A stretch of DNA of 64,000 nucleotides. It comes from Macrostomum lignano (lineage: Eukaryota). The first letter of the stretch is position 1. Each line of letters begins with the position of its first letter. Shown here piece by piece: positions 21,112 to 64,000 of this stretch. Position numbers and translations under genes: made by a program. The notes under the pieces are model-generated. The model was not told the origin of the DNA and ran no database searches. It was given only the letters and a program-made list of their open reading frames with translations. The stretch lies in the NCBI GenBank assembly GCA_002269645.1, contig NIVC01000006.1, positions 992,001-1,056,000 of the forward strand, read 5' to 3'.

Positions 21112-21860
21112 TCGAATCTCACAATGACCTTGAAATCTCGCAGTGACCCAGGAATCTTCCAATGACCTTGAAATCTCGCAGTGACCCAGGAATCTTCCAA
21201 TGACCTTGAAATCTTACAGAGACCAAAGAATCTTCCAATGACCTTGAAATCTTACAGGGACCAAAGAATCTTCCAATGACCTTGAAATCTTACAGAGACC
21301 AAAGAATCTTCCAATGACCTTGAAATCTTACAGAGACCAAAGAATCTTCCAATGACCTTGAAATCTTACAGAGACCAAAGAATCTTCCAATAACCTTGAA
21401 ATCTTACAGAGATCAAAGAATCTTCCAATGACCTAATCTAATCTTACAGAGATCAAAGAATCTTCCAATGACCTTGAAATCTTACAGAGACCAAAGAATC
21501 TTCCAATGACCTTGAAATCTTACAGAGACCAAAGAATCTTCCAATGACCTTGAAATCTTACAGAGATCAAAGAATCTTCCAATGACCTAATCTAATCTTA
21601 CAGAGATCAAAGAATCTTCTAATGACCTTGAAATCTTACAGAGACCAAAGAATCTTCCAATGACCTTGAAATCTTACAGAGACCAAAGAATCTTCCAATG
21701 ACCTTGAAATCTTACAGAGATCAAAGAATCTTCCAATGACCTAATCTAATCTTACAGAGATCAAAGAATCTTCCAATGACCTTGAAATCTTACAGAGACC
21801 AAAGAATCTTCCAATGACCTTGAAATCTCACAGTGACCCAGAAATATTACAAGGACCTCG
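21112..21860. repeat. 38-bp minisatellite
   Basis: Unit AATGACCTTGAAATCTTACAGAGACCAAAGAATCTTCC. Confidence 0.95.
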
Positions 21861-47745: not shown

Positions 47746-48285
47746 AGCAACTCTCTAGTGACTCTAGCGACTCTGGGGCAACTCTTTTCACTTTTTAATA
47801 TGATGTAGGGGCGTACTGTTGGGACACAATTGCAGAACTGTAAAAGGGTTGCAAAAATTGTCTTCTTAAGAGTTATTGTGTTAGCACCTAATTTTCTACT
47901 AAATTAAGTAGACTAATTGCGAAATTTGATTATAATCGGTGATTATCTCGGTGATTATAAAGTGCCTCGAACATGACTCTATAGGCCTAGAGTCATTATA
48001 AAAGCACCCCACAGTCACTTGTGTCATCCCAAAGTCATTACAGAGTCGCAGAAAAAGATTTATTAAAGGCCTCAAATTGACTCTTAGGCGATTTTTTAAT
48101 GACTTGCGACCCTGACACCTCGTCGTTTGGAGTCAATTCTTTCTTAATTTACCTGTGTTGCCTAAGTACTGTTTTCATCAGAAATGGGGGCGTACGCAGC
48201 GGCGTTGACTTTATCATTGCCAGCTAATTAAAAATACGAGTTTAAACAAAATTTACAGCTAAATTCCAAGCCCAAGCCATACACA

Positions 48286-48957
48286 ATGCGCAGTCCAAAG
48301 TCTCAGCAGGGAAACAGTTCCAGTTCAGCTTCGTCATCAGCAGCGGTTAGCAACAAGCTGAAGCAGCACAAGCGCAAACTGGCCGAGCTGCGGGCCAGCC
48401 ACGCCAAGCTGCAGACTGAGCACGCCGACTGCCGGCTCACCATCGCGTCCCTGCGCGAACGAAACGCCATGCTTGAGGCCCGGGCTTCGTCCTCAACTTC
48501 AACCGCAGCCTCCTCAGCTGCTGCCGCCACCAACAGTCGGCATTCGTACTTAGCCAAGGAGAACGAGCATCTCATGCGACAGCTGGACAGCCTGCTGTCC
48601 GCCGCCAATTCTCGTCGAACGTCTGGCAACGAGGACGCCGCGTCGCAGTGCTCTTCGTCCTTTCACTCGGCTGCCGCTGCCTCTGTGGCTGCCGCATCTG
48701 TCCAGACCGAATCTGACTGTCGTGGCAGCGACAGTTCAACTGCCGAGTCTCTGGCCCGACTCACCGGCGAGATTGGCGACCTGCTTGATCAGCTGCGCGC
48801 CGGCCGGGAGCGCGAGGAGGCGCTCCGCTGCAAGCTGGTCACCGCCGAGGAGCGGGTGGCCTTCGTGCGCGAAGAGAAAAAAGAACTGCAAAAGCGAACG
48901 GACCGCTACTTAGACGAGAAGCTGGAAAAGGGAGAGGCGCTTGAAGAAGCTAAAGCG
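48286..48957 (+). CDS. Coiled-coil protein exon 1
   Basis: Long GC-rich heptad-rich ORF; upstream acceptor atttacag| at 48258 in frame; donor GCG|GTGAGT. Confidence 0.8.
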
Positions 48958-49506
48958 GTGAGTTTATAATTTGACTAGGTGCCGATATGTAGCTTATATT
49001 ACTTTGTAAAAGTGCTTTTGAACAACTTAAAAATTTTATTCAAATCTAGTCCACATAAGCAGTCTAGCCTGTTTAATTATTTGCCTGTTTTTTCGCTAAA
49101 TTAAAAAATTTAGCTCGGCGCCGATATGTAGCGTAAAATACTTTCTGTAGCGCTTTTTGAAGTGCCGTAAATGAATGTAAACAAAGTATTGGGATGGTCC
49201 TTTAACTACTATTTTTTTCAAAAAAGATTTTTTTCAGCTAAATTTTCTGTCAGCTGTTAAATTCTTGCATTCAATTTTTGGCAAGATCTAGACACTGGAT
49301 ATTTACCGATATGTAGCGTAATATACTTTGTAAGACCGTTTTTTTCTGACAGTTTTAAAGAATAAAAAATACATTTTCAGACTTAAAGTTAAAAAATTCT
49401 AAACTAGCAATTGGAAAACCTCTGGAAAAAATCAGGCGCCGATATGTAGCGTAAATAACTTTGTGGAGCGCATTATTTTCATCGCGAGTCCCAATTAATT
49501 ATGCAG

Positions 49507-50091
49507 GAGATCCAACGCCTTGAAGCCGCTTTAGCCGAGGCGGATTCTAAATTATCGGCCACCTCAGAATCCGCTGCTAGCGCTGCCACCAGCGCCGAGC
49601 AGCGCGCCAACGACGCCGTAAAAGTCGCCGAGCAGCGCGCCAACGACGCCATAAAACTCGCCGAGAAGCGCGCCGCCGATGCTGAACAACGCGCCGCGCG
49701 CGCCGAATCGTCTCTAGCCGAGCTTCAACGACGCCAGACAGCCGCCGCCGAGGCTGAGAAACGCCAGCTGCTCAGCCGATGTCGCGAAGCTGAGCGCCTG
49801 GCCGCCGAGCGCGAGCAGTCTGTGCGCGAGATGGATGTCCGCCTCAGCCGAGCCGTAGCTGAGGCCGAGTCCCATTCGCGGGAGGCCCGCTCAGCGAAAG
49901 ACCGGCTGGCCGCCGTGGAGGCGGAGAAAAATCGACTTTTAGAATCGGCCAATTCAACGACTAACGAGACGGAGCGTCGGCTGGTTGAGGAGCGTCGGCG
50001 GGTGGCCGGGTTTGAGCAGGCCCAGTCCGCTGCCAAGGAGATGCTGGCCGATCTGCAGGAGCAGGTTGCCGTGCTCAAAGATCAGCTCAAG
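49507..50091 (+). CDS. Coiled-coil protein exon 2
   Basis: Acceptor atgcag|GAG in phase 0; Ala/Glu/Arg-rich heptads; donor AAG|GTTCGG. Confidence 0.8.
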
Positions 50092-50358
50092 GTTCGGCTC
50101 AGTTTCTCTGCTTTGTTGCAGCTTGTCTGTCATGTCTTCGTGTCTTTGTGTCTTCCTATCTTCATGTCGTCTTATCTTTATGTCTTCATGCCTTCATGTC
50201 TTCGTATCTTCGTCTCTTCGTGCCTTTATGTCGTCTTATCTTCATGTCTTCCTTTTTTTAAGTCTTCCTAGCTTTGTTTCTTCACGTCTTCATGCGTGAT
50301 TGCGTGAGCTGAGCCACAACCACTACTCTACTCAACTGCACCTATCCGTCGCCTTCAG

Positions 50359-50700
50359 TCCGCACAGGCTCAGCTGGACCGTCGCCAGCAGGCGGCCGCA
50401 GCCGACACGGCCGCTCAGCTGTCCGAGCTTCGCTCCGCAGTCAGCTCCGAGCGTAAACGCGCCGCCAAATCGGAATCAGAGGCCGAACGATTGCTGCAAC
50501 GACTGCGCCAGACAGAATCGGAATTGGACTCGGCCGAGCGCAGGCATCAGGAAGCTCGGGAGGAATGGCAGACTCGAGCCTATCAGCTTGAGCAGACCTG
50601 CGCTCAGCAATTAAAATTAATTGATTATTTGCGACCGTTTGAAGAGCAACTGAATAATTGTCGGTGTCGGGCTAAGAAAGTTGTGCGAGTTCTCGGACAG
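50359..50700 (+). CDS. Coiled-coil protein exon 3 (citron-like motif)
   Basis: Acceptor at 50358 (or in-frame 50367). LEQTCAQQLKLIDYLR resembles citron TISQQTKLIDFLQ. Donor CAG|GTGAGT. Confidence 0.75.
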
Positions 50701-50729
50701 GTGAGTATCTCTTGACTGCTCTGATTTGT

Positions 50730-51125
50730 CAGGAAGTGGTAGAGAGAATCATACTAGGACTTCTCTGATTGGCCAGGAAAGGTTAAAGAGAGAGAGAATC
50801 AGACTAGGGCTTTCTGATTAATTAGGAAAGGGGTAGAGAGAGAATCAGACTAGAGTTTCTCTGATTGGTCAGGAAAGGGGTAGAGAGAGAATCAGACTAG
50901 GGCTTCTCTGATTGGTCAGGAAAGGGGTAGAGAGAGAATCAGACTAGGGCTTCTCTGATTGGTCAGGAAAGGGGTAGAAAGAGAATCAGACTAGAGTTTC
51001 TCTGATTGGTCAGGAAAGGGGTAGAGAGAGAATCACACTAGGGCTTCTGATTGGTCAGGAAAGGGATAGAGAATCAGACTAGGGCTTCTCTGATTATGGT
51101 CAGGGGTTAGAGAGAGAATCAGACT
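50730..51125. repeat. 47-bp minisatellite in intron
   Basis: Unit CTGATTGGTCAGGAAAGGGGTAGAGAGAGAATCAGACTAGGGCTTCT. Confidence 0.9.
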
Positions 51126-51484
51126 GCTAGCCCAGCAACTGAGTATCTGGGAGCCTCGCCTTTCTTTATTTGGTCAGAAACTTAAGAAAATACATCTATT
51201 ATGGGACATTCTAAATTTTGTATATTGAAGTTTTTAAAGAATAATGTATGTAATTAGGCTAATGCAATTTCAATACCCTTCAACTCTTCGTAGTGAACAA
51301 GTCCTCACTGCAGGAGCCATGGCTGCATTATAAGACTTGTGATTCCACTGTAATGGGAAAGAATTTAGTCAGACCAACCGGCTATGCTGGGACTGAAGCC
51401 ACCTGACGGAATATATCTGTATATCTCCCACCATGCAGCAAAATGTAAATTTCCTAAATTTATTGTCAATCCGCCATTATCCAG

Positions 51485-51655
51485 TGGAACTCGGCAGCTC
51501 TGTCAACTCCGCAGAGGACCAGCGCATCCACAGTTGCAGCTCCGCAAGATGGAGCCACAATGTCAGTTCAGAAGCAGCAGCAGCATCAACAAGCTGTTGG
51601 CAGTTGGCCATCAAGCAACAAATACAGTTTCGTTACTCCTAAAAGCAAGCCCTGA
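51485..51655 (+). CDS. Coiled-coil protein probable terminal exon
   Basis: Acceptor tatccag|TGG in phase 0; WNSAALSTPQRT...FVTPKSKP* with TGA at 51653-51655. Confidence 0.55.
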   Translation, partial: WNSAALSTPQRTSASTVAAPQDGATMSVQKQQQHQQAVGSWPSSNKYSFVTPKSKP

Positions 51656-52537
51656 TTAGTTGCTTATTCAACTCGGTTCAGTCATTTCTCTTGAGTGCTT
51701 TTAACTACCTGTTATTAACTAAAACTTTTGTATTTCTTAACTGATTTTTATTCTTGTAAATATATACTTAATTGTTACTTCAAGTAGGCATTTAAAAATC
51801 AAGCATATTGCTTTCTAAATTTATCTTATGAAGTTTTTTGCGGCTTTTTAATTATCCCACAGGCGTCTGCATTTGAGTCTATTTAGCTAATTATGCTAGC
51901 TTGCACAGCTCAAATTATTCATTGCATGCTCAATTATACTATAATTGCTTTTTATAAAACTGAACTTTCAATCTTATATCACACTATTTTTTCATGCTTG
52001 TTTTTTACTGTTTTGTATAAAAATTAAATCATTGCGAGCGTCAAATTTAAAGAAGTATTTTTATAATGGCTTTATCAGTGAAGGTAAAAAATGTTTAATA
52101 TTCAGTGCTTCTCTCAGTTCAGTATGTGAATCATTTAGTGTCAGTTACAGGTTTTTTTTCATATTGTTGTGTAACGCTGCACTAACTAGTACCTTTTTAT
52201 ACTTCTTAAAGTAAACACGCTTGATTTGTAGCAAGTAGGAATTTGCGGCGAGCTATAAATGAGTTGACTTTTTCAATTTTTTATTCGCCATTAGCTAATA
52301 TCTGACACTGTATAGGCATTGATAATGCAAAACAATTTATATTTTAAAATAGATTCATTGGCGTATAGTTTTTTCTGCAGTTTCAATCCTCTCGGTCACT
52401 GTTGCAGCTTCCCCTGCGCCTCATCAGACGGTCAGTAATGGCTTTTAATCAGTTAAATTAGATCTACTCTTAGCTACTCATAGTGTAATGGCGTTGCCAT
52501 TGATGATGCTACAATCAAGTTACATAGATATCTGCTT

Positions 52538-52962
52538 AGCTTCCAGTCCAGATGCTATCGTTAGGTTGCATGGACTGCTGGTTAGCTTCCAGTCCAGGTG
52601 CTATCATTAGGTTACATGGACTGCTAATTAGCTTCCAGTCCAGATGCTATCATTAGGTTGCATGGACTGCTGGTAGCTTCCGGTCCAGATGCTATCATTA
52701 GTTTACATGGACTGCTGGTTAGTTTCCAGTCCAGATGCTATCATTAGGTTACATGGACTGCTGTTTAGCTTCCAGTCCAGATGCTATCATTAGGTTACAT
52801 GGACTGCTAATTAGCTTCCAGTCCAGATGCTATCATTAGGTTGCATGGACTACTGGTAGCTTCCGGTCCAGATGCTATCATTAGTTTACATGGACTGCTA
52901 ATTAGCTTCCAGTCCAGATGCTATCATTAGGTTGCATGGACTGCTGGTAGCTTCCGGTCCAG
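52538..52962. repeat. 46-bp hairpin minisatellite upstream of RNFT
   Basis: Unit AGCTTCCAGTCCAGATGCTATCATTAGGTTGCATGGACTGCTGGTT with CAGTCCA/TGGACTG arms. Confidence 0.93.
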
Positions 52963-53048
52963 ATTGCTACATTCAGACAAACAGTTTCCAGTCCAGAATT
53001 TTATAGGTCAAAGACTCCTTTTCAAAGAACACCATCCCCATCCAATTC

Positions 53049-53402
53049 ATGCGTCACCTCGGCCGCAGGATGTCCGCCTCCGACCCGGAGGCCAGAAGCC
53101 TATCGACAACTGGCAGCTCCTCGGCATCAAATCCATCGTCTTTGTCAGTGAATTTGGAGCCATTTTTAGCTCAACTGCCGCACAATATCCATGACAACGC
53201 TGCTAGCAACAACAGTAACTCTTATACGGTTGGCGCCGTCGATGAGAACCCTGCCGACGCTGTGAATGGCGCTCCGGCGCCAAATCCAACAGCTGGTCAA
53301 CAGCAGAACCCGAATCAGGCATTTATTCAAGTCACTAAAGCGGTGCTGCCTTCGCTGCCCTTCATTCTGCTGTTGGCCTTGAAGTTTCTGTACGATCACA
53401 AG
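53049..53402 (+). CDS. RNFT2: RING finger and transmembrane domain protein (RNFT1/2 family) exon 1
   Basis: ...LPSLPFILLLALKFLYDHK matches RNFT LPFILILLAKLVFQHK. Donor AAG|GTGAGA. Start could be 53049 or 53070. RNFT1 versus RNFT2 is not resolvable. Confidence 0.85.
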
Positions 53403-53709
53403 GTGAGAGAGTGCGTGTCTCGGGTTCAGATATGATTACCTTGTAAATAAATATGGAGAGTTACCCATTCCGCTGACCTCTGAGTCACAGACACGCGTTG
53501 TACAGGGGCTCTGACCTGCTCGTCATTATTGAAGTTCGCATACTTGTGTGTATTCTAATTTTACAAGAAAAGTCTTTAAATTATCCCGTTGAAAAACGTT
53601 ACCGTGACAAGAATCGCCTAGAGTCATTGCAAACGATTCAATGGGGCCGGCTCTTGTTACTTTTAAAACGACTCAAACGACTGTAATGCGACGGAGATGC
53701 GACTGTTTG

Positions 53710-54322
53710 GGAGAATTTCACTAGGCCGAAATTTCACTTCGCCGAAAGCATCTTCCTTCACAAGGCCGAAACTTCACAAGGCCGAAACTTCACTAGTCCG
53801 AAACTTCACTTTGCCGAAATGACTAGCACGCTCTTTCATAAGGCCGAAACTAACATTATAACATTAAAGTGAATCTTAGAGCCATGCATTTTCTACGAAT
53901 CGGAATCCAGGCAAATCTGAATGCTTTCAAAGGAGCCATAAAAAACATACAAACACTCTATAACTTAAAAGTCCATCCGACTGAGACAGAAAATGCAATG
54001 AAAATAATAAGCAATCGGAGTTCACCCCCAAATAAAGTCAGAAGTGTCGAAAATATTCCATACAAAAAACTAAGCGACCATATCGTGCTCCCACTTTGGT
54101 AGCAGAGTAACACTTAGGTCAAAATAAAGAAACTGGTGCAGAGAAATCGTCACTGCTTGCGGTTCCATTTTGGGAGGCTTAAGTTCGCATCCCCTTTCGA
54201 CCATAGTAAGAGTTTCGGCCTTTTGAAACAGCGTGCTAGTCATTTCGGCAAAGTGAAGTTTCGGCCAAGTGAAAGAGAGTGCTTTTCGGCAAAGTGAAAT
54301 TTCGGCCTAATGAAAGCGCCCC
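53710..54322. mobile_element. MULE-like foldback element in RNFT intron 1
   Basis: Inverted arms of AGGCCGAAATTTCAC subrepeats; TSD GACTGTTTG (9 bp, readable as 10 bp) at 53701-53709 and 54323-54331. Confidence 0.85.
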
Positions 54323-54510
54323 GACTGTTTGAGTCACGACCGCATCACGTGAGTTGCAGAGTCGTTAAAGTCGCCTAAGAGTCGTTGTGTTACCCCTTAG
54401 CTTTTTACTAAACCCAAGCAGACTAAAAACAGTTTTATAAATGCGAAATGCGATTCTAATTCATAAATTGACGCAGGTGCGCTTTAGTAGACGCAACTCC
54501 AGAGTCTCAG

Positions 54511-55142
54511 GCCCCAGAGTCTCAGGCAATATAAAACGCCTCAAAATTGACTCTTAGACGAATCTTTGACAACATTTTGGCAACTTTTACCGCGACATCT
54601 GGTCGTTTTGGATTCGTCTGGAGTCACTTCTTTCCTCTTTTACCTGTGTTGTTAAACGAGGGTGGGAAGCCGGAGCCCGTATAAAACGAAACGGTCACAA
54701 GCGTTACAGACCACGGTAACAAGGGGAACGGTCACAGCCCCTTTTTGTGACCGTTTCGTTTTATACGGGGAGGCTACCCGCGGATCAGCCCTGGGAGGGG
54801 CTCTGCCGCTGAGGGGCACTACCAGGGGCCTAAGCCCGAGATACCCACATGATTGGTCCCCGACGTCTAGGCCAGGAGGAATTTTGGAGCTACTAACCCA
54901 AACCTATGGTACAAGACACCGCCAACCCCAAAAGTGGAATCAGGGACGGTGCTAGGACCGAGTCCAGTCCACCCAGGCCAGCCCCCAGCAGACAAGTCCT
55001 CGGGAGTGCGCGAAAAAACAGAATTGGAAATGAAAATGTTGGGTATACTACTGAAAGCCGTCCAAGAGCGGGGAAACCCAGAAGTCTTGGAATAGGGCTT
55101 AACTATTGGAGTGAACTGTGTTACCTGCAACGACTCTGGGGC
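54511..55142. mobile_element. GCCCCAGAGTC-family element with internal insertion
   Basis: Inverted termini GCCCCAGAGTC / GACTCTGGGGC; homologous to 23708-23821 and 48040-48150. Confidence 0.6.
54676..54769. mobile_element. 94-bp miniature element with perfect 25-bp TIRs
   Basis: CCCGTATAAAACGAAACGGTCACAA / TTGTGACCGTTTCGTTTTATACGGG, flanked by GAG on both sides (possible 3-bp TSD). Confidence 0.65.
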
Positions 55143-55377
55143 AACGCAAGTCACTCTGGGACGCTTCTCGGCCTATGTACTGTTCACATCAGTTTTGTAC
55201 ATGACCTTGAAATAAATTAAGCAGAGGTGCAAGCTGAGATAATTGATATTGAAGCTGAGAGATGCATTAAATAATCTATAGGTGGAAAATGAATTGAACT
55301 CGGGGTACTTTGAAGAGAGTCAGACGCGTGTCAATTTATTGAACTAGCCAAGCCCGATACAACGCCCCCAAACCAAG

Positions 55378-55899
55378 GTCGGACTGCTGCTGTTTGTCTG
55401 CCTCTGGCTGCTGTTCGCCAAATGCAACGAAGGCGTCACAAAGCTGATCAGTCGGAGTCGAGCGCCAGTTGTTAACCTGGCAGCCTCCTCTGGGGCCTCG
55501 CATCGCAGACAAGCCGCCTGTCTGTGCTTAGTTTGCCTAGCAACTGTGCTTCTAGTTATTTACCTCTTCAAAGAGCAGTCATTGTGGCTCAGTCTGATTT
55601 GTTTGCCACCAAATTTGCAAACCTACGGCTTCTGGAGCCTGCTGTTCACCGTGACTGTCGCTGATATGCTGCTAAAGTTTGTTGTCATGTCGATTAAACT
55701 GTCGGCTGTCTGCTTACTGTCTGACAGGCTGTCTTGCGTGTCGCTAACTCGGATTTATTTAATAGTGGAACGATTCTATCAGCTGTACAGACAGTTTGTC
55801 CCCATCGGAGTCTGGTATGTCACTCTCGTGTCTGGCGGCGGAGCCGACTCCTCACGTATCTACACCAGCCTGCTAGTGATTGCCTATGCCATTTTTAAA
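55378..55899 (+). CDS. RNFT2: RNFT exon 2 (transmembrane region)
   Basis: Acceptor accaag|GTC. LFTVTVADMLLKFVVMSIK...YQLYRQFVPIGVWY...AYAIFK aligns to RNFT LWIVGIADFVLKYITIALK...LFRSLVPIQLWY...LYSLCK. Donor AAA|GTGAGT. Confidence 0.9.
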
Positions 55900-56035
55900 G
55901 TGAGTTCTGCTTACTGCTTTTACGTTAGTTTATTTTTAATTTTTTTGTTTTTAATTTTGATAACAGTAACTGTTGTTTCCGAGTACACCTGCATTGATTA
56001 GTGATATCCACTATAAACTCTGCGTCTGCTCCAAT

Positions 56036-56665
56036 CCCCCCAGCCGTCTGCACCAACCCCCCAGCCATCTTAACCAATCCCCTAGCCGTCTGCACCAACC
56101 CCCCAGCCGTCTGCACCAACCTCAGCCATGTTCACCAATACCCTAGCCGTTTGCATCAACCCCCCCCAGCCGTCTGCACCAACCCCCAGCCGTTTGCACC
56201 AACCCCCCCCCCCAGCCGTTTGCACCAACCCCCCCCCCAGCTGTCTGCACCAACCCCCCAGCCATCTTAACCAATCCCCCAGCCGTCTGCACCAACCCCC
56301 AGCCGTTTGCACCACCCCCCCAGCCGTTTGCACCAACCCCCCCCAGCTGTCTGCACCAACCCCCCAGCCATCTTAACCAATCCCCCAATCCCCTAGCCGT
56401 CTGCACCAACCCCCCAGCCATCTTAACCAATCCCCTAGCCGTCTGCACCAACCCCCCCCAGCTGTCTGCACCAACCCCCCAGCCATCTTAACCAATCCCC
56501 TAGCCGTCTGCACCAACCCCCAGCCATCTTAACCAATCCCCTAGCCGTCTGCACCAACCCCCCAGCCATCTTAACCAAACCCCCAGTCGTCTGCACCAAC
56601 CCCCAGCCATCTTCACCAACCCCCAGCCATCTTCACCAACCCCCAGTCGTCTGCACCAACCCCCG
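56036..56665. repeat. About 20-bp C-rich minisatellite in RNFT intron 2
   Basis: Unit CAGCCGTCTGCACCAACCCC. Confidence 0.93.
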
Positions 56666-56773
56666 GCTTTTATAATATTTATGTTTATTATTTAAGGCAA
56701 CTTTTATCTAAGGTAAACCAACTACTGAGAGTAGCATCTATACCTAGCAATAACAACATCTCCCCCCGGGCAG

Positions 56774-57115
56774 GTGCACAGCCTCTATACCTCGGCTATA
56801 CCGCTAGTCAAGATCCTGGCCAACCTAATCCAAACCCCAACGCTATTCGGCAATAATACCGCTCAATCGTCAACTAAGAGCTCCGACACCGGTAGTTGCT
56901 CCGACTCGAACGAGTGCCCGATCTGTCGCGAGCTGATGCGCGGTCCAGTTAGACTGGCCTGCCAGCACGCCTTCTGTCTGGACTGCCTGCTGCGCTGGCT
57001 GGCGCAGTCGCGAACCTGCCCGATGTGCCGTCAGGCTGTGGCGCCACCAGTGGACGGCCAGGACGCTCTGGCCTGGCTAGATGGCTCCACTACATCCGGG
57101 TTGCAGATCTACTGA
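56774..57115 (+). CDS. RNFT2: RNFT exon 3 (RING domain, terminal)
   Basis: CPICRELMRGPVRLACQHAFCLDCLLRWLAQSRTCPMCR, ending WLDGSTTSGLQIY* (RNFT: WKDGATSAHFQVY). Confidence 0.93.
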   Translation: MHSLYTSAIPLVKILANLIQTPTLFGNNTAQSSTKSSDTGSCSDSNECPICRELMRGPVRLACQHAFCLDCLLRWLAQSRTCPMCRQAVAPPVDGQDALAWLDGSTTSGLQIY

Positions 57116-57219
57116 CTTACGGTTGGAGTTCTAGGCAAAAAACATGGCCTATTGCTAAATGGCCCATTTTTTGTGAAATGCTTAATTTGTTTTTTTTTAA
57201 AGTTTATTGTCGCTAAATT

Positions 57220-57500
57220 TACCTGAGCTCAAAGACTCACCTGAGCTCAAAGACTCACCTAAGCTCAAAGACTCACCTGAGCTCAAAGACTCACCTAAGC
57301 TCAAAGACTCACCTGAGCTCAAAGACTCACCTGAGCTCAAAGACTCACCTAAGCTCAAAGACTCACCTGAGCTCAAAGACTCACCTGAGCTCAAAGACTC
57401 ACCTGAGCTCAAAGACTCACCTAAGCTCAAAGACTCACCTGAGCTCCAAGACTCCCTGAGCTCAAAGACTCGCCTGAGCTCAAAGACTCACCTGAGCTCC
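57220..57500. repeat. 18-bp minisatellite 3' of RNFT
   Basis: Unit CACCTGAGCTCAAAGACT. Confidence 0.95.
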
Positions 57501-58491
57501 AGGATCAAGCCCAAAAAGTATTCCACAGAGACTTAAGTGTCGCCTGAAGTTTCTGTTGCTTTATCTAGATCCTTTTTATTTCACTTATTGCCCATTGTAT
57601 CCTCCTCAAAACGAACTGATATTCAGTCAGAGCCTTGAGGTTTCAAATCGATTTATCAGCTTATTAACATGTTTAATTTTTTGTTTGATGATTTTTATCT
57701 GTACCAGTTTAATTTTTAAAAAGCAAAAATATAATAAATCAAACTTTTGTTTTAAAAGCAACCAATATTTGTGCTGTATTTCTGACGGTAGCATGGTGAA
57801 GTGTTTTTACATCGAATATTCATCGCTAAGTTTTTAATTTAAATTCCTATTATTTTTTTCAGAACTTAGTATTTATCAAAATTAAATTGCTGTACATTGT
57901 CTTCTGTTTTGTCTTCTTCTGTGTTCCAAAGTTTTTTCACTAACCTCTGCTTGTTAATAGAAGGTTATATTGTTTTCATTCTATTCAGAGAATTGTTGCA
58001 AGATCAGAGATTAAACTATTTTTATTGGTTGTTGGTCAGAATTTTTTTAATTGTTTGTTTCTTGTTGATTTATTTTAGTTTTAATGATGAATGCAGTAGG
58101 CTATTTTAGTATTGAATAAGTTTTGCGACCTTAATCTAGTTTTGCACAGGAAAAATCGGTTTTTTATTCTTGCCAGTTGCCAGTCAAAGTACTTTATAAC
58201 AGGTGTTCCTGGTCGATCATGGACTCCCAGTTTTAGCAAAGATACTAGAATAACTCGCAGTTAACGTTGTGAAGTATGAAAAAGTAGAGCGTCTACTCTG
58301 TGTTCAGTAGTTCGTCTGCACAGTGTCACTTATAAATTTAATATAACAGTTAAAATTTCTTTTTTCCTCAGGATTTGCAGCCTCAGGAGTATGTGGGGTT
58401 AAGAATGAACAACAAGCATTTAACTTAATGTGCAAAAGTGAACGCAAAACGGACGAAACTCAGCTTAGGGGCGAGCGAGGCAGACCCAAAA

Positions 58492-58797
58492 ATGATATAT
58501 AACAACTGGATTGTCAAACTACTCTATCTATAAGGGTTGAATATGCCTAAAATGTGACTCGCCAAACCCCTGCTTCCAGCTCATTGGCTGCTATTTTTAG
58601 CTCACTTGCTATGCCGACCTATGTAAAAACATTGCCTGGTGGTTAGAAAACTAGCTAGGACGGGTGTGTTTGCAAGGTTTTTTTTCTTCCTAGTGTATTT
58701 AAAACCCTCCAGCCAATGAGCATAAAAGAGGGGATTTGCGGGTCAAAATTTAAACATGCTTTAGCGCCAGTCTGACAATCCAGTTGTTATATATCAT
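58492..58797. mobile_element. Insert bounded by perfect 25-bp inverted repeats
   Basis: ATGATATATAACAACTGGATTGTCA / TGACAATCCAGTTGTTATATATCAT; interrupts a unit of the adjacent 80-bp array. TSD not clear. Confidence 0.6.
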
Positions 58798-58804
58798 CCT
58801 CGGG

Positions 58805-59305
58805 CCCAATCTAGCTCAGCCAATGAGAGAGCAGTAAGGAGAGAGGTCAAAGTCAGACGGACGAAACGCAGCCTAGGGGACAGGCGCAATCTAGCTCAGC
58901 CAATGAGAGAGCAGTAAGAAGAGAAGTCAAAGTCAGACGGACGAAACGCAGCCTAGGGGACAGGCGCAATCTAGCTCAGCCAATGAGAGAGAAGTAAGAA
59001 GAGAAGTCAAAGTCAGACGGACGAAAATCAGCCTAGGGGGTAGGCCCAATCTGGCTCAGCCAATGAGAGAGCTGTAAGGAGAGAGGTGAAAGTCAGACGG
59101 ACGAAACTCAGCCTAGGGGACAGGCGCAATCAAGCTCAGCCAATGAGAGAGAAGAAAGGAAAGAGGTCAAAGTCAGACAGACGAAAATCAGCCTAGGGGG
59201 CAGGCCCAATCTGGCTCAGCCAATAAGAAAGCAAAAAGGATAGAGGTGAAAGTCAGACGGATGAAAATCAGCCTAGGGGGCAGGCCCAATCTGGCTCAGC
59301 CAATT
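58805..59305. repeat. 80-bp tandem repeat with one CCAAT box per unit
   Basis: Unit CAGCCAATGAGAGAG...CAGCCTAGGGG.CAGGCxCAATCTxGCT, about 6 copies, ending about 60 bp before the ADPGK acceptor. Confidence 0.9.
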
Positions 59306-59366
59306 CGTTCCGTTAGTTTTTCAATACCCAACGCCACGCCACGCTCGCCCCCGCTCTTTTTTCCAG

Positions 59367-59692
59367 GGCAACCCGCAGCGCCTGCTATGCTGGGCAGTGG
59401 CCGCGGCCTTGCTAGCCTTTCTCGCCTCCTATTGGCTGACGGGCCATCAGCTGGCCAGCCAATCAGTGGAGGCCGTGGCCAAGGCGGCAGCCTTAACCGC
59501 CAGTTCGCTATCTCGCGTAGCCAGCAGCGCTGATAACAGACGGTCGGATCATTCCAGGCGAGCCAGGGTTGCCGTCGGTCTCGGGGCCAATGTTGACGTT
59601 CGAGCCAGTTCCGATCGCTTCTTGGCGTTGCTGGCTGCTCACGGAGGCGCTGCCATGGCAACAAAGGATGCAAGTAACAAACGGATTGATCG
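59367..59692 (+). CDS. ADPGK: ADP-dependent glucokinase-like protein, first visible coding exon (no genomic ATG at its start)
   Basis: Acceptor ctcttttttccag|GGC. Hydrophobic anchor LLCWAVAAALLAFLASYW, then RVAVGLGANVDV (ADPGK RVAVGVNACVDV). Donor CG|GTAAAA. Confidence 0.8.
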
Positions 59693-59861
59693 GTAAAATT
59701 CAAAAGTTTCTTTTTTATCTTTAAAAACGCTAATTTTGCTACTGAAACTGAAGTAAAAATAAACGCATATTTTTGCAAGTAGCATATCTAAATATTCTAG
59801 TATGTGGGGACTGGACAAACTAAAAGAACTTCCCCACACCGCCACACATCCGCCGTCGCAG

Positions 59862-60200
59862 GCTTAAAACTGCCTCCGACATTGTGGCGGATTTTCAACA
59901 GCGTTCGTCGGGCCGTCAGCCGGCCTCTGAGCGGCACCTTCACAATGCCAGCCTGTTTGCCGCTCTGGTCGCTGACTTGACGGCCGCTGGTGGCGTCCGC
60001 GGCAGCCAGCACCATCACCGGGTGTCTCTGGGCGGATGCCCTGTTCGCCTGGCCAACTCACTGGCCGGCTTCGGCTTTGAGGTGCTGCTCGGGGCTGGCC
60101 GGGCGGCCGGGCGCATGCGGGACCGGCTGGCCGAGGGAGTCTCGCTTGCTGCCGCTGCGGCCGAGACCAAAGACTCGGCTGTGGATGTGGATGAGTACCG
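59862..60200 (+). CDS. ADPGK: ADPGK-like exon 2
   Basis: ASERH (AAERF), LGGCPVRLA (VGGNAALIG), VLLG, DVDEYR (EVDEFH). Phase-2 junctions on both sides. Confidence 0.85.
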
Positions 60201-60209
60201 GTGAGCTGC

Positions 60210-61265
<1,056 letters not shown>

Positions 61266-61320
61266 CGCCTGGCTGCATTAGAATTCCACCAGAGCAGGAA
61301 CCCCATCGCCATCCCCTCAG

Positions 61321-61875
61321 GCTGCTAGTGGAGCAAGCCGACCCCGTCACAGGCGCGCACAGCTGGTACGCCCTCCGCCGGAGTCAGTGGAACGCTCAGC
61401 TGTCCAGCTTGCGCTCGTTTCAGTCCCGCATGGAGCAGTTCCAGCCAGACCTTCTCGTGCTGGCGGGCCTTCAGGCCATCCACGACCACCCGCAGTCTGC
61501 CGGACTGCTGCGCGATCGCCTGTCCAGCTTGGTGGAGTTCCTCACCGCCAGCGGCCGAGTGAAGACCCACCTGCGGCTGCCTCCGCTGCCGTCGGACGAG
61601 CCGAAGTTCGCTCAGCTGATGCTGGAGTTCGCGATGCCCTACGCTGACTCGCTGTTCCTCGATGGCCGCGGCCTGGTGGCTCTGCTGGGCGCCATGGAGA
61701 CTGGAAATCCGCCAGCTGTACCGGTTGAACCAGCGACTGTCACCGTCGGCCTGGACCTGCTCCGCCGGTTGTACAGCGTGCTGCGAACTACTTCGGTGAT
61801 GAATGGGCGCAGGAAAGTCAGCCGGCTGCACCTGCGGAGTCGGCTGGGATATCAGGCTTTGCTGGTGACTCACAG
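61321..61875 (+). CDS. ADPGK: ADPGK-like exon 3
   Basis: MEQFQPDLLVLAGLQ matches LEEFQPDLVVLSGLH; also VSRLHLRS. Acceptor ccctcag|G, donor AG|GTGAGG. Confidence 0.88.
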
Positions 61876-61914
61876 GTGAGGCATTAGTGGCTTGATTTAT
61901 GACTCACAGGTCTG

Positions 61915-62029
61915 GTAACTGACTGACTAACTAAATAACTAACTAACTAACTAACTTACTAACTAACTAACTAACTAACTGACTAACTAACTGACTAACT
62001 AACTAACTGACTAACTAACTAACTAACTG

Positions 62030-62068
<39 letters not shown>

Positions 62069-62150
62069 GACTGACTGACTGGCTAACTAACTAACTAACT
62101 GACTGACTAATTAGCTAACTAACTGACTGACTAACTAACTAGCTAACTAT
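61915..62150. repeat. (CTAA)n/(CTGA)n microsatellite in ADPGK intron 3
   Basis: Array ends about 25 nt before the acceptor at 62175. Confidence 0.95.
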
Positions 62151-62175
62151 CTCTCACACCCTCACTAATTCACAG

Positions 62176-62638
62176 AGCCGGCTGGCCTGACCCGGAATCG
62201 GCAGTTGCCGCCGCCTCTCTGGCTGCCTATCGTGCCGCCTGTGGTCGCCATGACGACACCGAAGCCAGCTACAATAGCGTCAGCAATCTTCAAAGTCGTC
62301 GCCGTATTCACCCGCGCCTGCTGGGCGACAGCCTGCCTAGCAACGCAGCTGTCAGTCCCAACTTTGGCTTCGGCTTTGCCAAAAGCAGCGAGCCGGATTT
62401 CTTCGACAACTGGCTGGCTTTGAATGCCACTCGGCCGGTGGGCTGCTGGACCGAGTCGCCGGATTTCACCGTCTGCCTGTCGCTGGCGCCGACTTGCGTT
62501 GGCGGCCACGGCGGCGGCGGCGGCGGAGGCACCGCGGCTATCGCTGCAGGCGATGCCTCGTTTGCCGCGGAGGCTGCGGCGCTGGCGGCCCAGCTGGGAC
62601 CAGCGGAGCCGATCGTGTTTCAGCCGCCTGGAGGCTGA
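62176..62638 (+). CDS. ADPGK: ADPGK-like exon 4, terminal
   Basis: AGWPDPESAVAAASLAAYRAACG ([22 protein letters not shown]) and TAAIAAGDASFAAE (TVGLGDAISAE). TGA at 62636-62638. Confidence 0.82.
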
Positions 62639-62709
62639 ACTTTAATATTCCACTCTGCTGCGTTAACTGTATCACTTTAGTCTGTAAAATTCTGCTGTAA
62701 CTTCTAGTT

Positions 62710-62931
62710 AATAATATATATTAAAAAGTCAGCTCAGCCGCAGCTATTGCGTGGCGCATCCTGGAGGCTGCGTACGGCCACAACCACCCTCAATTACCCA
62801 TTTTACAGCTGGTTGAACTGAAGCAATGCAGAGTTGAACGTGTCTTGCTCGGGGACACAAATTGTTCCGAGTGGGTCGGGAATCGAACCCCCGACCATTC
62901 AGTCTACAGTCTACCACTAGGCTACAGTCCC
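62710..62931 (-). mobile_element. tRNA-derived CORE-type SINE, copy 2
   Basis: Collinear with 14666-14970: CAGCTCAGCCGCAGCTATTGC...CCCATTTTACAGC...GAACTGAAGCAATGCAGAGTT...GGGAATCGAACC. Confidence 0.85.
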
Positions 62932-63832
62932 CTTTTTATAAGTTCCCTAGTTAGAAACTAAATCGAATTCAGATTAGGATTCAAGGACTACTTAAGTAGA
63001 AGGACGGGAAATCTCGTTTCTTTTAAAATTGTAGTACGCAGTACGCAGAAATCGCGTGTTTAAAATGGGGTTCCTTTTTGCATCTGTAAGCAGTCCCTAC
63101 TTGTGAGCTAACTAACTACGGTAAGTAGTATAAGCAGCATTTGAAACTTGCGCAGTTAAAGTTTACAGGCAATGCTTTGAGATTCTGTTGTTGTTGTATA
63201 TTCTACTGTTTTATCTGTTTAGTGAGTAGGATGTACTTTTTATAAATTGAATAATGCGTTTTTTATCTTACGATCCCAGTTCTTTACGACTATAAGCGAT
63301 TATGTTGACTTGTAAAAGTTGTCAGTTCCTTCCTTCAAATAGCTTTTTTATCTATTCATTATTTCTATATTTAGTAATTCAATACATATCTGTGTAATGT
63401 TTATGCAACTATCAACATCTTTCTGGCATATACGAGCTAAATGTAATAAAAACGGCTTGAAATTTTTTTAACGCCAAAGCTGTTTATCGGCTGTCATGCA
63501 TTCCAACTAAGCTGAGATTAAATATTGATTGCTCTTAAATCCATTCCTTTTTTCCTCATGGTCACATGAGACTAAACGTCTTCATCCCAAGTTGACTTTC
63601 TGGACTCAAAATAATTGGCATGACAGCTTTGGACGAGTTAAGTGTGTGTACTTTTGGCTTAGCAACTAATGTCTTCTACAGCTTCTGTCTGTGGCCCTTA
63701 CCTCCCCCCTCACTAGGCAGTTAGGCAGTGAGAAATCTTTTCTGCAGTCAAAGGCAAAACTTTACGCTGCCAATCTATTTGCTTGAAAGCCATCCATTTC
63801 GAAGGCGACTTCGGCTAATTTGATAACACAGG

Positions 63833-64000
63833 ATGGCTCCGGACGACAAATCTGCCAACAATCGAGTCGAGCTGGACATCTCAACAGACAGCTCGGACAA
63901 TGCTCAGCCGTCCAGACCGAAGCGGATTCGGCGACCTGGCGAAGACGGCTGGTTAAAGACGTTTCACGATCCGAACGCCGACAGGAGCCTGTTGGATTCG
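63833..64000 (+). CDS. N-terminus of an unidentified gene running off the window
   Basis: acacag|G-ATG, then 56 open GC-rich codons MAPDDKSANNRVELDISTDSSDNAQPSRPKRIRRPGEDGWLKTFHDPNADRSLLDS. Confidence 0.55.
   Translation, partial: MAPDDKSANNRVELDISTDSSDNAQPSRPKRIRRPGEDGWLKTFHDPNADRSLLDS

What the first reader, a model, noticed from the sequence alone, without database searches (positions are those of the whole stretch)
59274..59692. ADPGK has no genomic start codon for its N-terminus: candidate use of the spliced-leader 3'-terminal AUG
Seen: the ADPGK frame has a TAG at 59274 and no ATG until 59655, which lies downstream of the signal anchor and the conserved VAVG...VDV motif. The nearby ATG at 59387 is out of frame. 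A strong acceptor (CCCCGCTCTTTTTTCCAG|) at 59366 opens the frame exactly in phase 0. Known: flatworm spliced leaders end in AUG and can supply the initiator Met. Inference: SL trans-splicing at 59367 would give M-GNPQRLLCWAVAAALL..., a complete protein that depends on the leader for its start.
Basis: partly seen in the sequence, partly recalled or inferred. Interest (0 to 1): 0.7.

Follow-up and report, generated by a model that had tools for sequence, protein, structure and literature searches.

The report
Flatworm gene borrowing spliced-leader start codon
A Macrostomum lignano gene of the ADP-dependent glucokinase family has no start codon of its own and most likely takes its AUG from the trans-spliced leader, a mechanism already known in flatworms, so this is a sound but ordinary example.

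Summary
The window is Macrostomum lignano assembly Mlig_3_7. The four-exon gene (59367-62638) encodes 560 aa identical to GenBank PAA94627.1, annotated "partial", and its CDS starts exactly at 59367. In that frame there is a TAG at 59274, no ATG until 59655 (codon 97), and an out-of-frame ATG at 59387. TTCCAG|G at 59366 matches the published trans-splice acceptor motif [T/C]TNCAG.

The M. lignano leader ends ...TTATTGCATG. Gene boundaries in this annotation were cut at peaks of leader-bearing reads. Two sister copies read TTGCATG|GGCAAC at the same junction, while proteins from the older ML2 assembly read FFQ (TTTTTCCAG) there. The likeliest cause is RNA-seq polishing that wrote leader bases into the assembly, an indirect trace of leader-joined mRNA.

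Homology with a second M. lignano ADPGK and with animal ADPGKs runs through the membrane anchor upstream of codon 97, so translation must begin near 59367. The leader AUG gives a typical N-terminus.

Two corrections. The protein is a divergent paralogue that has lost several catalytic motifs. The mechanism has been known since Cheng et al. 2006. No reads or proteomics were available, so initiation at the leader AUG remains inferred.

The parts
58803..59304 (+). 80-bp tandem array (6.3 copies), each unit carrying CCAAT-box-like CAGCCAAT. Probable promoter-proximal region or upstream part of the outron.
   Evidence: TRF. 11 of the window's 17 CAGCCAAT sites lie in 58583-59463, against 3.1 expected for the whole window. 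The promoter role is inference.
59274..59276 (+). In-frame TAG that closes the ADPGK frame upstream. There is no ATG between it and the acceptor.
59349..59366 (+). Pyrimidine tract plus acceptor CCCCGCTCTTTTTTCCAG|. The proposed SL trans-splice acceptor.
   Evidence: Sequence. It matches the M. lignano trans-splice motif [T/C]TNCAG (PMC8629364). The GenBank 5'-partial CDS starts at the next base.
59367..59692 (+). Exon 1, phase 0 after the acceptor. Codons 1-108 (GNPQRLL...) hold the signal anchor (59382-59438) and the VAVGLGANVDV motif (59568-59600).
   Evidence: Homology to paralogue P0006 starts at residue 8.
59387..59533 (+). Out-of-frame ATG opening a 48-codon overlapping ORF. On the trans-spliced mRNA it would be the second AUG.
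59655..59657 (+). First in-frame genomic ATG (codon 97). A start here would remove the anchor and the first 30 residues of the Pfam domain.
59862..60200 (+). Exon 2
   Evidence: 100% match to PAA94627.1.
61321..61875 (+). Exon 3
62176..62638 (+). Exon 4, ending in the TGA stop at 62636-62638

Best explanation
The gene is copy g3 of Mlig006769, a divergent ADP-dependent-glucokinase-family paralogue of Macrostomum lignano. Its pre-mRNA is probably made from a promoter in or near the CCAAT-rich repeat array just upstream. It is then trans-spliced at TTCCAG|GGC (59366|59367) to the 35-nt spliced leader, which ends ...UUAUUGCAUG. The leader's terminal AUG becomes the first AUG of the mRNA and sits in phase 0 with exon 1. 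Translation then yields M-GNPQR-LLCWAVAAALLAFLASYWL..., a 561-aa type-II membrane-anchored protein with a normal ADPGK-type N-terminus. The genome itself encodes no initiator for this protein.

Shown: the sequence layout, the identity of the organism and its leader, the annotation boundary, and the homology of the N-terminal region.

Inferred: that SL-joined mRNA is the main product of this copy, and that ribosomes start at the SL AUG.
For: 1. Layout. In-frame TAG at 59274, no in-frame ATG before codon 97, acceptor in phase 0.

2. Organism and leader. The spliced protein is 100% identical to M. lignano PAA94627.1, and the window is identical to NIVC01000006.1. The SL ends in ATG, and the trans-splice acceptor motif is [T/C]TNCAG.

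3. Annotation boundary. The three GenBank copies g1, g3 and g4 are all 'partial' and all start at GNPQ. In g1 and g4 the assembly even shows an ATG immediately upstream, yet the CDS does not include it. The boundary therefore came from the transcript end. Mlig_3_7 transcript ends were cut by TBONE at peaks of reads that carried the leader (PMC5730564).

4. Leader bases in sister copies.
- g1 and g4 read CTCTTTTTGCATG|GGCAAC where the window reads CTCTTTTTTCCAG|GGCAAC. These three clustered changes create the SL's last 5 nt in a stretch that is 98% identical overall.
- The ML2-derived model P0004 is identical to g1 at all 12 diagnostic residues, yet begins FFQGNPQ, which corresponds to TTTTTCCAG.
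- Mlig_3_7 was polished with Pilon using STAR-mapped RNA-seq.
- The same kind of footprint (TATTGCATG) sits 9 nt upstream of the ATG in two of three copies of the canonical ADPGK paralogue.
- Only these two outrons resemble the SL 3' end enough for an aligner to extend into them.

5. Coding homology upstream of codon 97.
- The paralogue P0006 (MLPLKYSILVAALAFGLAYWLNYRHQL...) aligns from residue 8.
- The 17 ADPGK homologues aligned with it all have Met, then a stretch of 1 to about 35 residues, then a hydrophobic anchor; those in which a simple pattern search found the [VI]A[VI]G..x.D motif have it at residues 47-91.
- Mouse ADPGK 5CCF aligns RVAVGVNACVDV to RVAVGLGANVDV.
- dN/dS between g3 and g1 for codons 1-96 is 0.25 (3 synonymous, 2 non-synonymous changes).

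6. Precedent. Flatworm SL AUGs serve as initiators (Cheng et al. 2006, as cited in PMC9851317, and PMC12582326).
Against: - No RNA reads, RACE, ribosome profiling or peptide data could be consulted. The protein collection holds no transcript-derived members for either ADPGK cluster.
- The SL AUG has a weak -3 U (though a +4 G), so some scanning past it to the out-of-frame ATG at 59387 is likely.
- The polishing-footprint argument is indirect. It does not explain why the window copy alone kept its acceptor.
- In parasitic flatworms acceptors are often shared between cis- and trans-splicing, so an additional cis isoform cannot be excluded.
- The protein has lost several catalytic motifs, and dN/dS is 0.4 overall. 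Constraint on it is therefore only moderate.
Confidence: 0.78

Rival explanations
1. A cis-spliced upstream exon, or read-through from the upstream RING-finger gene, uses the same acceptor and supplies an in-frame genomic ATG. The leader would then not be needed.
For: - Flatworm acceptors are frequently shared between cis- and trans-splicing (PMC12582326).
- The RING gene lies on the same strand 2.25 kb upstream, and the same gene pair is kept at the canonical paralogue.
- Nine ATG..GT combinations between 57116 and 59366 would join in frame.
Against: - None of the nine has a good donor; the best scores 3 of 5 consensus positions.
- The ATGAGAGAGCA|GTAAGG in each 80-bp repeat unit would join out of frame (read).
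- The annotation cut the transcript at this acceptor on SL-read evidence.
- With the SL Met the N-terminus is already of normal length for the family.
Confidence: 0.06
2. The GCATG in copies g1 and g4 is real genomic sequence, so those copies have their own ATG. It could be ancestral, or copied in from a trans-spliced cDNA by gene conversion. The window copy would then be a variant that either depends on the SL or is simply start-less.
For: Two assembled copies read ATG|GGCAAC in frame. A similar SL-like 9-mer occurs in two copies of the canonical paralogue. A full SL sequence has been reported at the 5' end of another trans-spliced gene in the assemblies (PMC8629364).
Against: - The ML2-derived protein of the g1 type begins FFQ, not FCM.
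- Mlig_3_7 was polished with RNA-seq.
- Three clustered changes reproducing the SL end in two unrelated junctions fit a systematic artefact better than two independent conversions.
- The changes are confined to within 5 nt of the junction and fall off with distance (L007 is changed only at -2).
- Only SL-like outrons are affected.
- Even on this reading the GCATG derives from the SL, which still implies trans-splicing at this junction.
Confidence: 0.07
3. The locus is a decaying or non-canonical gene. Either the N-terminal region is not translated and the product starts at Met97 or at a near-cognate codon such as CTG 59382, or no stable protein is made.
For: - Catalytic motifs are degenerate: NEQE becomes DGRG, HxE becomes HLR, ANRF becomes AHSW, GGNA becomes GGCP.
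- dN/dS is 0.40 overall.
- Copy g4 carries a frameshift at codon 425.
- In-frame near-cognate codons exist.
Against: - The 560-codon ORF across four exons is intact in g3 and g1.
- The anchor and the VAVG..N.D motif are conserved with the paralogue and lie upstream of Met97.
- There are no indels in exon 1 among the copies.
- CTG 59382 has a poor context (C at -3 and at +4).
- A start at Met97 would cut 30 residues off the Pfam domain.
Confidence: 0.08

Closest known systems
Schistosoma mansoni mRNAs that need the SL 3'-terminal AUG as initiator (Cheng, Cohen, Ndegwa & Davis 2006, J Biol Chem 281:733; summarised in PMC9851317 and PMC12582326)
   Same: A flatworm leader ending in AUG is spliced in frame to an ORF that has no genomic initiator upstream of conserved N-terminal sequence. 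The summary states that the SL AUG is in frame in 28% of trans-spliced S. mansoni transcripts and that more than 40 cDNAs need it.
   Different: The species is a free-living macrostomorph and the gene is different. Use of the SL AUG is inferred from sequence and annotation here, not tested by translation assays.
slORFs: ORFs created by spliced-leader addition (slORFfinder, PMC9851317)
   Same: The start codon is supplied by the leader, and the ORF cannot be seen from the genome alone.
   Different: That work catalogued nematodes, Oikopleura and trypanosomes using ribosome footprints. No M. lignano data are included.
SL trans-spliced genes of M. lignano (Wudarski et al. 2017, PMC5730564; Ustyantsev & Berezikov 2021, PMC8629364)
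   Same: The acceptor motif [T/C]TNCAG, the 35-nt SL, and a gene boundary set at the splice site. About 30-39% of the species' genes belong to this class.
   Different: In the text I read, those papers do not discuss the SL AUG as an initiator. [quoted passage not shown] This gene is not named in any searchable paper.
Canonical M. lignano ADPGK, Mlig009787/Mlig032601 (P0006, 505 aa)
   Same: Same family. The N-terminal anchor is homologous. The upstream RING-finger neighbour is the same. It is probably also trans-spliced at a TTTCCAG-like site.
   Different: It has its own genomic ATG. The SL AUG would be closed after three codons (AUG UUA AUU UAA) immediately before that ATG. It keeps all the catalytic motifs that the window protein has lost. 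The two proteins are only 35% identical.
Mammalian ADP-dependent glucokinase (mouse, PDB 5CCF/5CK7)
   Same: The PF04587 fold region and the RVAVG.xAxVDV strand align (E 2.5e-11).
   Different: The window protein is Ala/Gly-rich, carries inserts, and lacks the NEQE and HxE motifs.

Membership tests
SL trans-spliced mRNA of Macrostomum lignano | Acceptor of the form [T/C]TNCAG directly at the 5' end of the mature mRNA body | tested here: met
   TTCCAG| ends at 59366. The motif is from PMC8629364.
SL trans-spliced mRNA of Macrostomum lignano | Reads or cDNAs carrying the SL joined to the exon at that site | tested here: inconclusive
   No reads were accessible. Indirect evidence: the 5'-partial CDS starts at 59367 in an annotation cut at SL-read peaks, and SL 3'-end bases are written against GGCAAC in copies g1 and g4.
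SL-AUG-initiated ORF (sensu Cheng et al. 2006) | The leader ends in AUG | tested here: met
   ...TTATTGCATG
SL-AUG-initiated ORF (sensu Cheng et al. 2006) | The SL AUG is in frame with the ORF, with no stop between them | tested here: met
   The exon is in phase 0 at 59367, and 560 codons are open through to the TGA.
SL-AUG-initiated ORF (sensu Cheng et al. 2006) | No genomic in-frame AUG upstream of conserved N-terminal sequence, and homology to relatives extends upstream of the first genomic AUG | tested here: met
   The first ATG is codon 97. Homology to P0006 begins at residue 8, and the anchor-plus-VAVG motif architecture is shared with the 17 aligned ADPGK homologues.
SL-AUG-initiated ORF (sensu Cheng et al. 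2006) | Translation shown to start at the SL AUG | not testable with these tools
   This needs ribosome profiling, N-terminal proteomics or reporter assays.
ADP-dependent glucokinase family (Pfam PF04587) | Significant match to the family profile | tested here: met
   108.1 bits against a cut-off of 27, residues 67-435. PDB 5CCF at E 2.5e-11.
ADP-dependent glucokinase family (Pfam PF04587) | Motifs conserved across the family, expected in an active kinase: GGNA, ANRF, HxE, NEQE, GxGD | tested here: not met
   In the alignment the window protein has GGCP, AHSW, HLR and DGRG; only GD (AAGDAS) and the N-terminal N.D are kept. The paralogue P0006 keeps all of them. The window protein is therefore a family member by fold and sequence but probably not an active ADPGK. 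The assignment of these motifs to catalysis rests on my own knowledge of the ribokinase-like ADP-dependent kinases.

The most novel reading that the evidence does not exclude
The SL-like GCATG next to the exon in the sister copies, and TATTGCATG upstream of the canonical paralogue, are real genomic sequence. On this reading, 3' ends of the spliced leader were copied back into the genome from trans-spliced mRNAs by cDNA-templated gene conversion. That would hard-wire the leader's AUG as a genomic start codon and destroy the acceptor. The window copy would be the unconverted state, and the family would show a start codon moving between leader and genome.
Probability: 0.07. Interest if true: 0.65.

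Novelty: new member of a known kind. Interest (0 to 1): 0.3.

Why it matters
There are two practical points.

1. In flatworm genomes many proteins flagged 'partial' or 'no start codon' are probably complete once the leader's AUG is added. Annotation pipelines and proteomic databases should append it, otherwise the true N-terminus is lost. Here that N-terminus is a membrane anchor.

2. Polishing a genome with RNA-seq in a trans-splicing organism appears to overwrite acceptor sites with leader bases. This creates false genomic ATGs and erases AG dinucleotides in the M. lignano reference. Promoter and transgene design in this model animal relies on that reference.

Biologically, the two ADPGK paralogues treat the same leader AUG in opposite ways, one fusing it in frame and the other closing it with a three-codon mini-ORF. 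This is a neat but small illustration of how trans-splicing shapes start-codon evolution.

Tried and rejected
- **SL RNA gene in the window.** I searched for the 35-nt SL with up to 3 mismatches and found nothing. The 10-nt SL 3' end with up to 1 mismatch gave 4 hits against 7.5 expected, none at a gene start.
- **TTGCATG upstream of the RING gene.** The four hits in window 52566-52938 are copies of a ~46-bp tandem repeat, not SL footprints.
- **Transcript-derived proteins starting MGNPQ.** The 90% cluster has five members, all from NCBI or UniRef genome models. The canonical paralogue's cluster also has no run-assembly members. I therefore judged a second whole-database search with exon 1 alone to be futile and did not run it.
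- **Literature.** The gene name is absent from searchable full texts and from the held supplements of PMC5730564 and PMC8629364. Wasik et al. 2015 is not held.
- **Cis-exon scan.** No convincing candidate was found.
- **Assembly indel.** I considered whether an indel could put the ATG at 59387 in frame. I rejected this because five independent models share the same frame and the anchor is homologous to the paralogue in that frame.
- **N-myristoylation of Met-Gly.** Considered and dropped. GNPQRL does not fit the usual consensus, by my own knowledge.
- **tRNA and Rfam scans of the window.** Both were negative.

Full report
**1. What the window is**

The spliced translation of the region is 100% identical over 560 aa to GenBank PAA94627.1, 'hypothetical protein BOX15_Mlig006769g3, partial [Macrostomum lignano]'. 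Window 49367-64000 is base-for-base identical to NIVC01000006.1 of assembly GCA_002269645.1, which is Mlig_3_7. The organism is therefore a free-living flatworm in which about 30-39% of genes are SL trans-spliced (PMC5730564; PMC8629364).

**2. The observation**

- Reading the sequence and translating 59274-59695 confirms the TAG at 59274. Thirty sense codons without Met follow, then the acceptor CCCCGCTCTTTTTTCCAG| ending at 59366, then an open frame beginning GNPQRLLCWAVAAALLAFLASYWL.
- The first in-frame ATG is at 59655, codon 97. The ATG at 59387 is in another frame and opens a 48-codon ORF.
- Four exons with canonical GT..AG borders (59367-59692, 59862-60200, 61321-61875, 62176-62638) give an intact 560-codon ORF. 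It hits Pfam ADP_PFK_GK over residues 67-435 (E 5.6e-31) and mouse ADPGK 5CCF (E 2.5e-11), with RVAVGLGANVDV aligned to RVAVGVNACVDV.
- A start at codon 97 would remove the only hydrophobic anchor (59382-59438) and the first 30 residues of the domain.

**3. Is the leader available and the site suitable?**

The M. lignano leader is ...CGGTCTCTTACTGCGAAGACTCAATTTATTGCATG. All reported flatworm leaders end in ATG. The top motif at 21,754 mapped M. lignano trans-splice sites is [T/C]TNCAG, placed right at the junction, and the window has TTCCAG|. No SL RNA gene lies in the window.

**4. Evidence that the mRNA really starts at 59367**

- The GenBank CDS spans exactly 59367-62638 and is flagged partial. 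The other two GenBank copies, g1 (L002) and g4 (L003), are also partial and also begin at GNPQ.
- The Mlig_3_7 annotation was built by cutting transcriptional units at peaks of reads from which a leader had been trimmed (the TBONE pipeline). ORFs were then called on those transcripts.
- In g1 and g4 the assembly shows an ATG immediately before GGC, yet the CDS does not include it. The boundary therefore reflects a transcript end, not genome-based ORF finding.
- Elsewhere in the fetched loci, several 5'-partial CDS starts also lie 0-5 nt after intact acceptors. Examples are TTTCAG|ca|ACT at L005/L006 and TTTACAG|CTA at L003 (window 48258|48259). One partial call, the window RING gene at 53085, starts at no acceptor.

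**5. A footprint of the leader in the sister copies**

- Aligning 300 nt around the site shows 98% identity. At the junction, however, the window reads CTCTTTTTTCCAG|GGCAAC while g1 and g4 read CTCTTTTTGCATG|GGCAAC. The three changes at -5, -3 and -2 turn the acceptor into the last five bases of the leader. With the two T's before them, this gives a 7-nt match.
- Two protein models from the older ML2 assembly cover the same point (that UniProt A0A1I8H350 and A0A1I8GUV4 derive from ML2 is my own knowledge). Both begin FFQGNPQ. One of them (P0004) is identical to g1 at all 12 residues that distinguish g1 from g3. For the g1-type copy the two assemblies therefore disagree exactly at these bases.
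- Mlig_3_7 was polished with Pilon using Illumina DNA and STAR-mapped RNA-seq. The simplest reading is that RNA reads carrying a few leader bases were aligned across the junction and outvoted the DNA.
- I looked for a second case and found one. In the canonical ADPGK paralogue, two copies read TATATATTGCATG|TTAATTTAA-ATG, a 9-nt match to the leader end. The third reads TATATATTTCCTG|CTAATTTAA-ATG. Three of the six differences in 130 nt fall within those six columns.
- A simple +1/-1 extension score shows that only these two outrons resemble the leader's 3' end enough for an alignment to run on (best score +2 reaching -10, and +4 reaching -12). The two splice-site acceptors scored as controls (RING at L005, 598-aa gene at window 48258|48259) and two other AG sites (window RING gene, downstream gene) all stop at -1.
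- This model is post hoc and rests on few sites, but it is coherent. If it is right, these bases record mRNAs with ...GCAUG joined to GGCAAC.
- It leaves one thing unexplained: why the window copy kept its acceptor (note 4).
- The alternative is that the GCATG is genuine and arose by cDNA-templated conversion. I rate it at about 7%. It would still mean the bases came from the leader.

**6. Evidence that translation must begin at or near 59367**

- An exhaustive HMMER search found a second M. lignano ADPGK: P0006, also known as Mlig009787/Mlig032601. It is 505 aa, complete, and 35% identical. Its N-terminus MLPLKYSILVAALAFGLAYWLNYRHQL aligns with LCWAVAAALLAFLASYWLTGHQL from residue 8 of the window protein.
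- The 17 ADPGK homologues aligned with it all show Met, then a stretch of 1 to about 35 residues, then a hydrophobic anchor. Where a simple pattern search found the [VI]A[VI]G..x.D motif, it lies at residues 47-91.
- With the leader Met the window protein fits this pattern: Met, five residues, the anchor, and the motif at residue 69. No further exon is needed.
- Between g3 and g1, exon 1 has no indels. Codons 1-96 show 3 synonymous and 2 non-synonymous changes, giving dN/dS 0.25. For the whole CDS dN/dS is 0.40. These numbers are too small to be significant, but they are compatible with coding.

**7. Rivals**

- **Cis exon.** A scan of the 2.25 kb between the upstream RING gene and the acceptor finds nine ATG..GT pairs that would join in frame, none with a good donor. 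The tempting ATGAGAGAGCA|GTAAGG in each 80-bp repeat unit joins out of frame.
- **Near-cognate start.** CTG 59382 has a poor context.
- **Decaying gene.** This cannot be dismissed, because the protein has lost GGNA, ANRF, HxE and NEQE, which become GGCP, AHSW, HLR and DGRG. The canonical paralogue keeps all of them. However, the ORF is intact in two copies.

**8. Mechanism**

A dense cluster of CAGCCAAT boxes surrounds the acceptor: 11 of the window's 17 sites lie in 58583-59463, most of them in a 6.3-copy 80-bp array. After subtracting tandem repeats, the distance to the upstream gene (about 1.5 kb) exceeds the 1-kb operon threshold used for this species. I therefore infer that the gene has its own promoter and a short outron.

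Trans-splicing places a 32-nt 5' UTR plus AUG in front of GGC. The AUG context (U at -3, G at +4) is moderate, so some leaky scanning to 59387 is expected.

The canonical paralogue contrasts with this. There the leader AUG would be followed by UUA AUU UAA and then the gene's own AUG. That is a three-codon mini-ORF which neutralises the leader AUG.

**9. Comparison with what is known, and verdict**

Use of the flatworm leader's terminal AUG as initiator was established in Schistosoma mansoni. There it is in frame in 28% of trans-spliced transcripts and required by more than 40 cDNAs (Cheng et al. 2006, as summarised). The M. lignano leader, its acceptor motif and this gene's boundary are all public.

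This is therefore a new, well-supported example of a known mechanism. I found no paper that names this gene.
- the gene is a divergent, probably non-catalytic ADPGK paralogue;
- the interest is modest.

The most useful by-product is the indication that RNA-seq polishing corrupted trans-splice acceptors in the reference assembly.

Noticed in passing
L002 9994-10000 and L003 9994-10000 (copies g1 and g4 of the window gene); L005 12826-12832 and L006 13153-13159 (canonical ADPGK paralogue): The last 7-9 nt of the spliced leader (TTGCATG / TATTGCATG) are present in the Mlig_3_7 assembly exactly where other copies or the older assembly have a TTTCCAG-type acceptor. This probably results from Pilon polishing with RNA-seq. 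It creates false genomic ATGs and erases AG acceptors.
   Followed up: partly
window 59367-62638 (protein residues ~165-370 and the C-terminus): The encoded ADPGK-family protein has lost motifs conserved in all other aligned family members: GGNA becomes GGCP, ANRF becomes AHSW, HxE becomes HLR, NEQE becomes DGRG. It keeps GD and the N-terminal N.D. It is probably a pseudo-enzyme. The canonical ADPGK of the species is a different gene (Mlig009787, 35% identical).
   Followed up: partly
window 58583-59463: A dense cluster of CCAAT-box-like CAGCCAAT sites (11 of the window's 17), mostly inside a 6.3-copy 80-bp tandem array at 58803-59304 that ends 60 nt before the acceptor. The array is shorter in the sister copies. 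It may be a repeat-built promoter.
   Followed up: partly
L005 12833-12844, L007 13259-13270 (canonical ADPGK): If trans-spliced at the inferred site, the leader AUG would read AUG-UUA-AUU-UAA and stop immediately before the gene's own AUG. This is the opposite solution to the one in the window paralogue.
   Followed up: partly
window 48252-48290: The 598-aa gene upstream also has a 5'-partial CDS that begins directly after an acceptor (TTTACAG|CTA at 48258|48259). The leader AUG would be in frame, and the first genomic ATG lies 9 codons downstream, so its true start is ambiguous.
   Followed up: partly
window 53060-53090: The RING-finger gene's annotated CDS starts at 53085, 15 nt downstream of an in-frame ATG (53070) that sits 1 nt after CCGCAG|. 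The sister copy starts 3 nt earlier. The annotated 5' end looks arbitrary.
   Followed up: no
window 53085-57115 with 59367-62638; L005-L007 10001-17165: A RING-finger gene followed about 1-2.3 kb later by an ADPGK-family gene on the same strand is found at both paralogous families. The pair was duplicated as a unit.
   Followed up: partly
window 60212-61264 and 61916-62149: Intron 2 is almost entirely a 1.05-kb (TGTC)n microsatellite (266 units) and intron 3 a (TAAC)n run (58 units). Differences in their lengths account for most of the gene-length differences between copies.
   Followed up: no
L003 12140-12604 and 16862-17325; P0002: Copy g4 has a frameshift after codon 424 and a second copy of the last exon 4.7 kb downstream, with overlapping gene calls. 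This is either an assembly duplication or a damaged copy.
   Followed up: no
window 62850-62930, minus strand: A tRNA-like stretch (GGTTCGATTCCCGACC T-arm-like sequence) sits just after the ADPGK 3' end. ARAGORN and Rfam report nothing, so it is probably a tRNA-derived repeat fragment.
   Followed up: partly
window 52540-52960, 56023-56664, 57221-57499: Further tandem arrays with periods of ~46 bp, 21/42 bp and 18 bp around the RING gene. The 46-bp unit happens to contain TTGCATG, which is unrelated to the leader.
   Followed up: no
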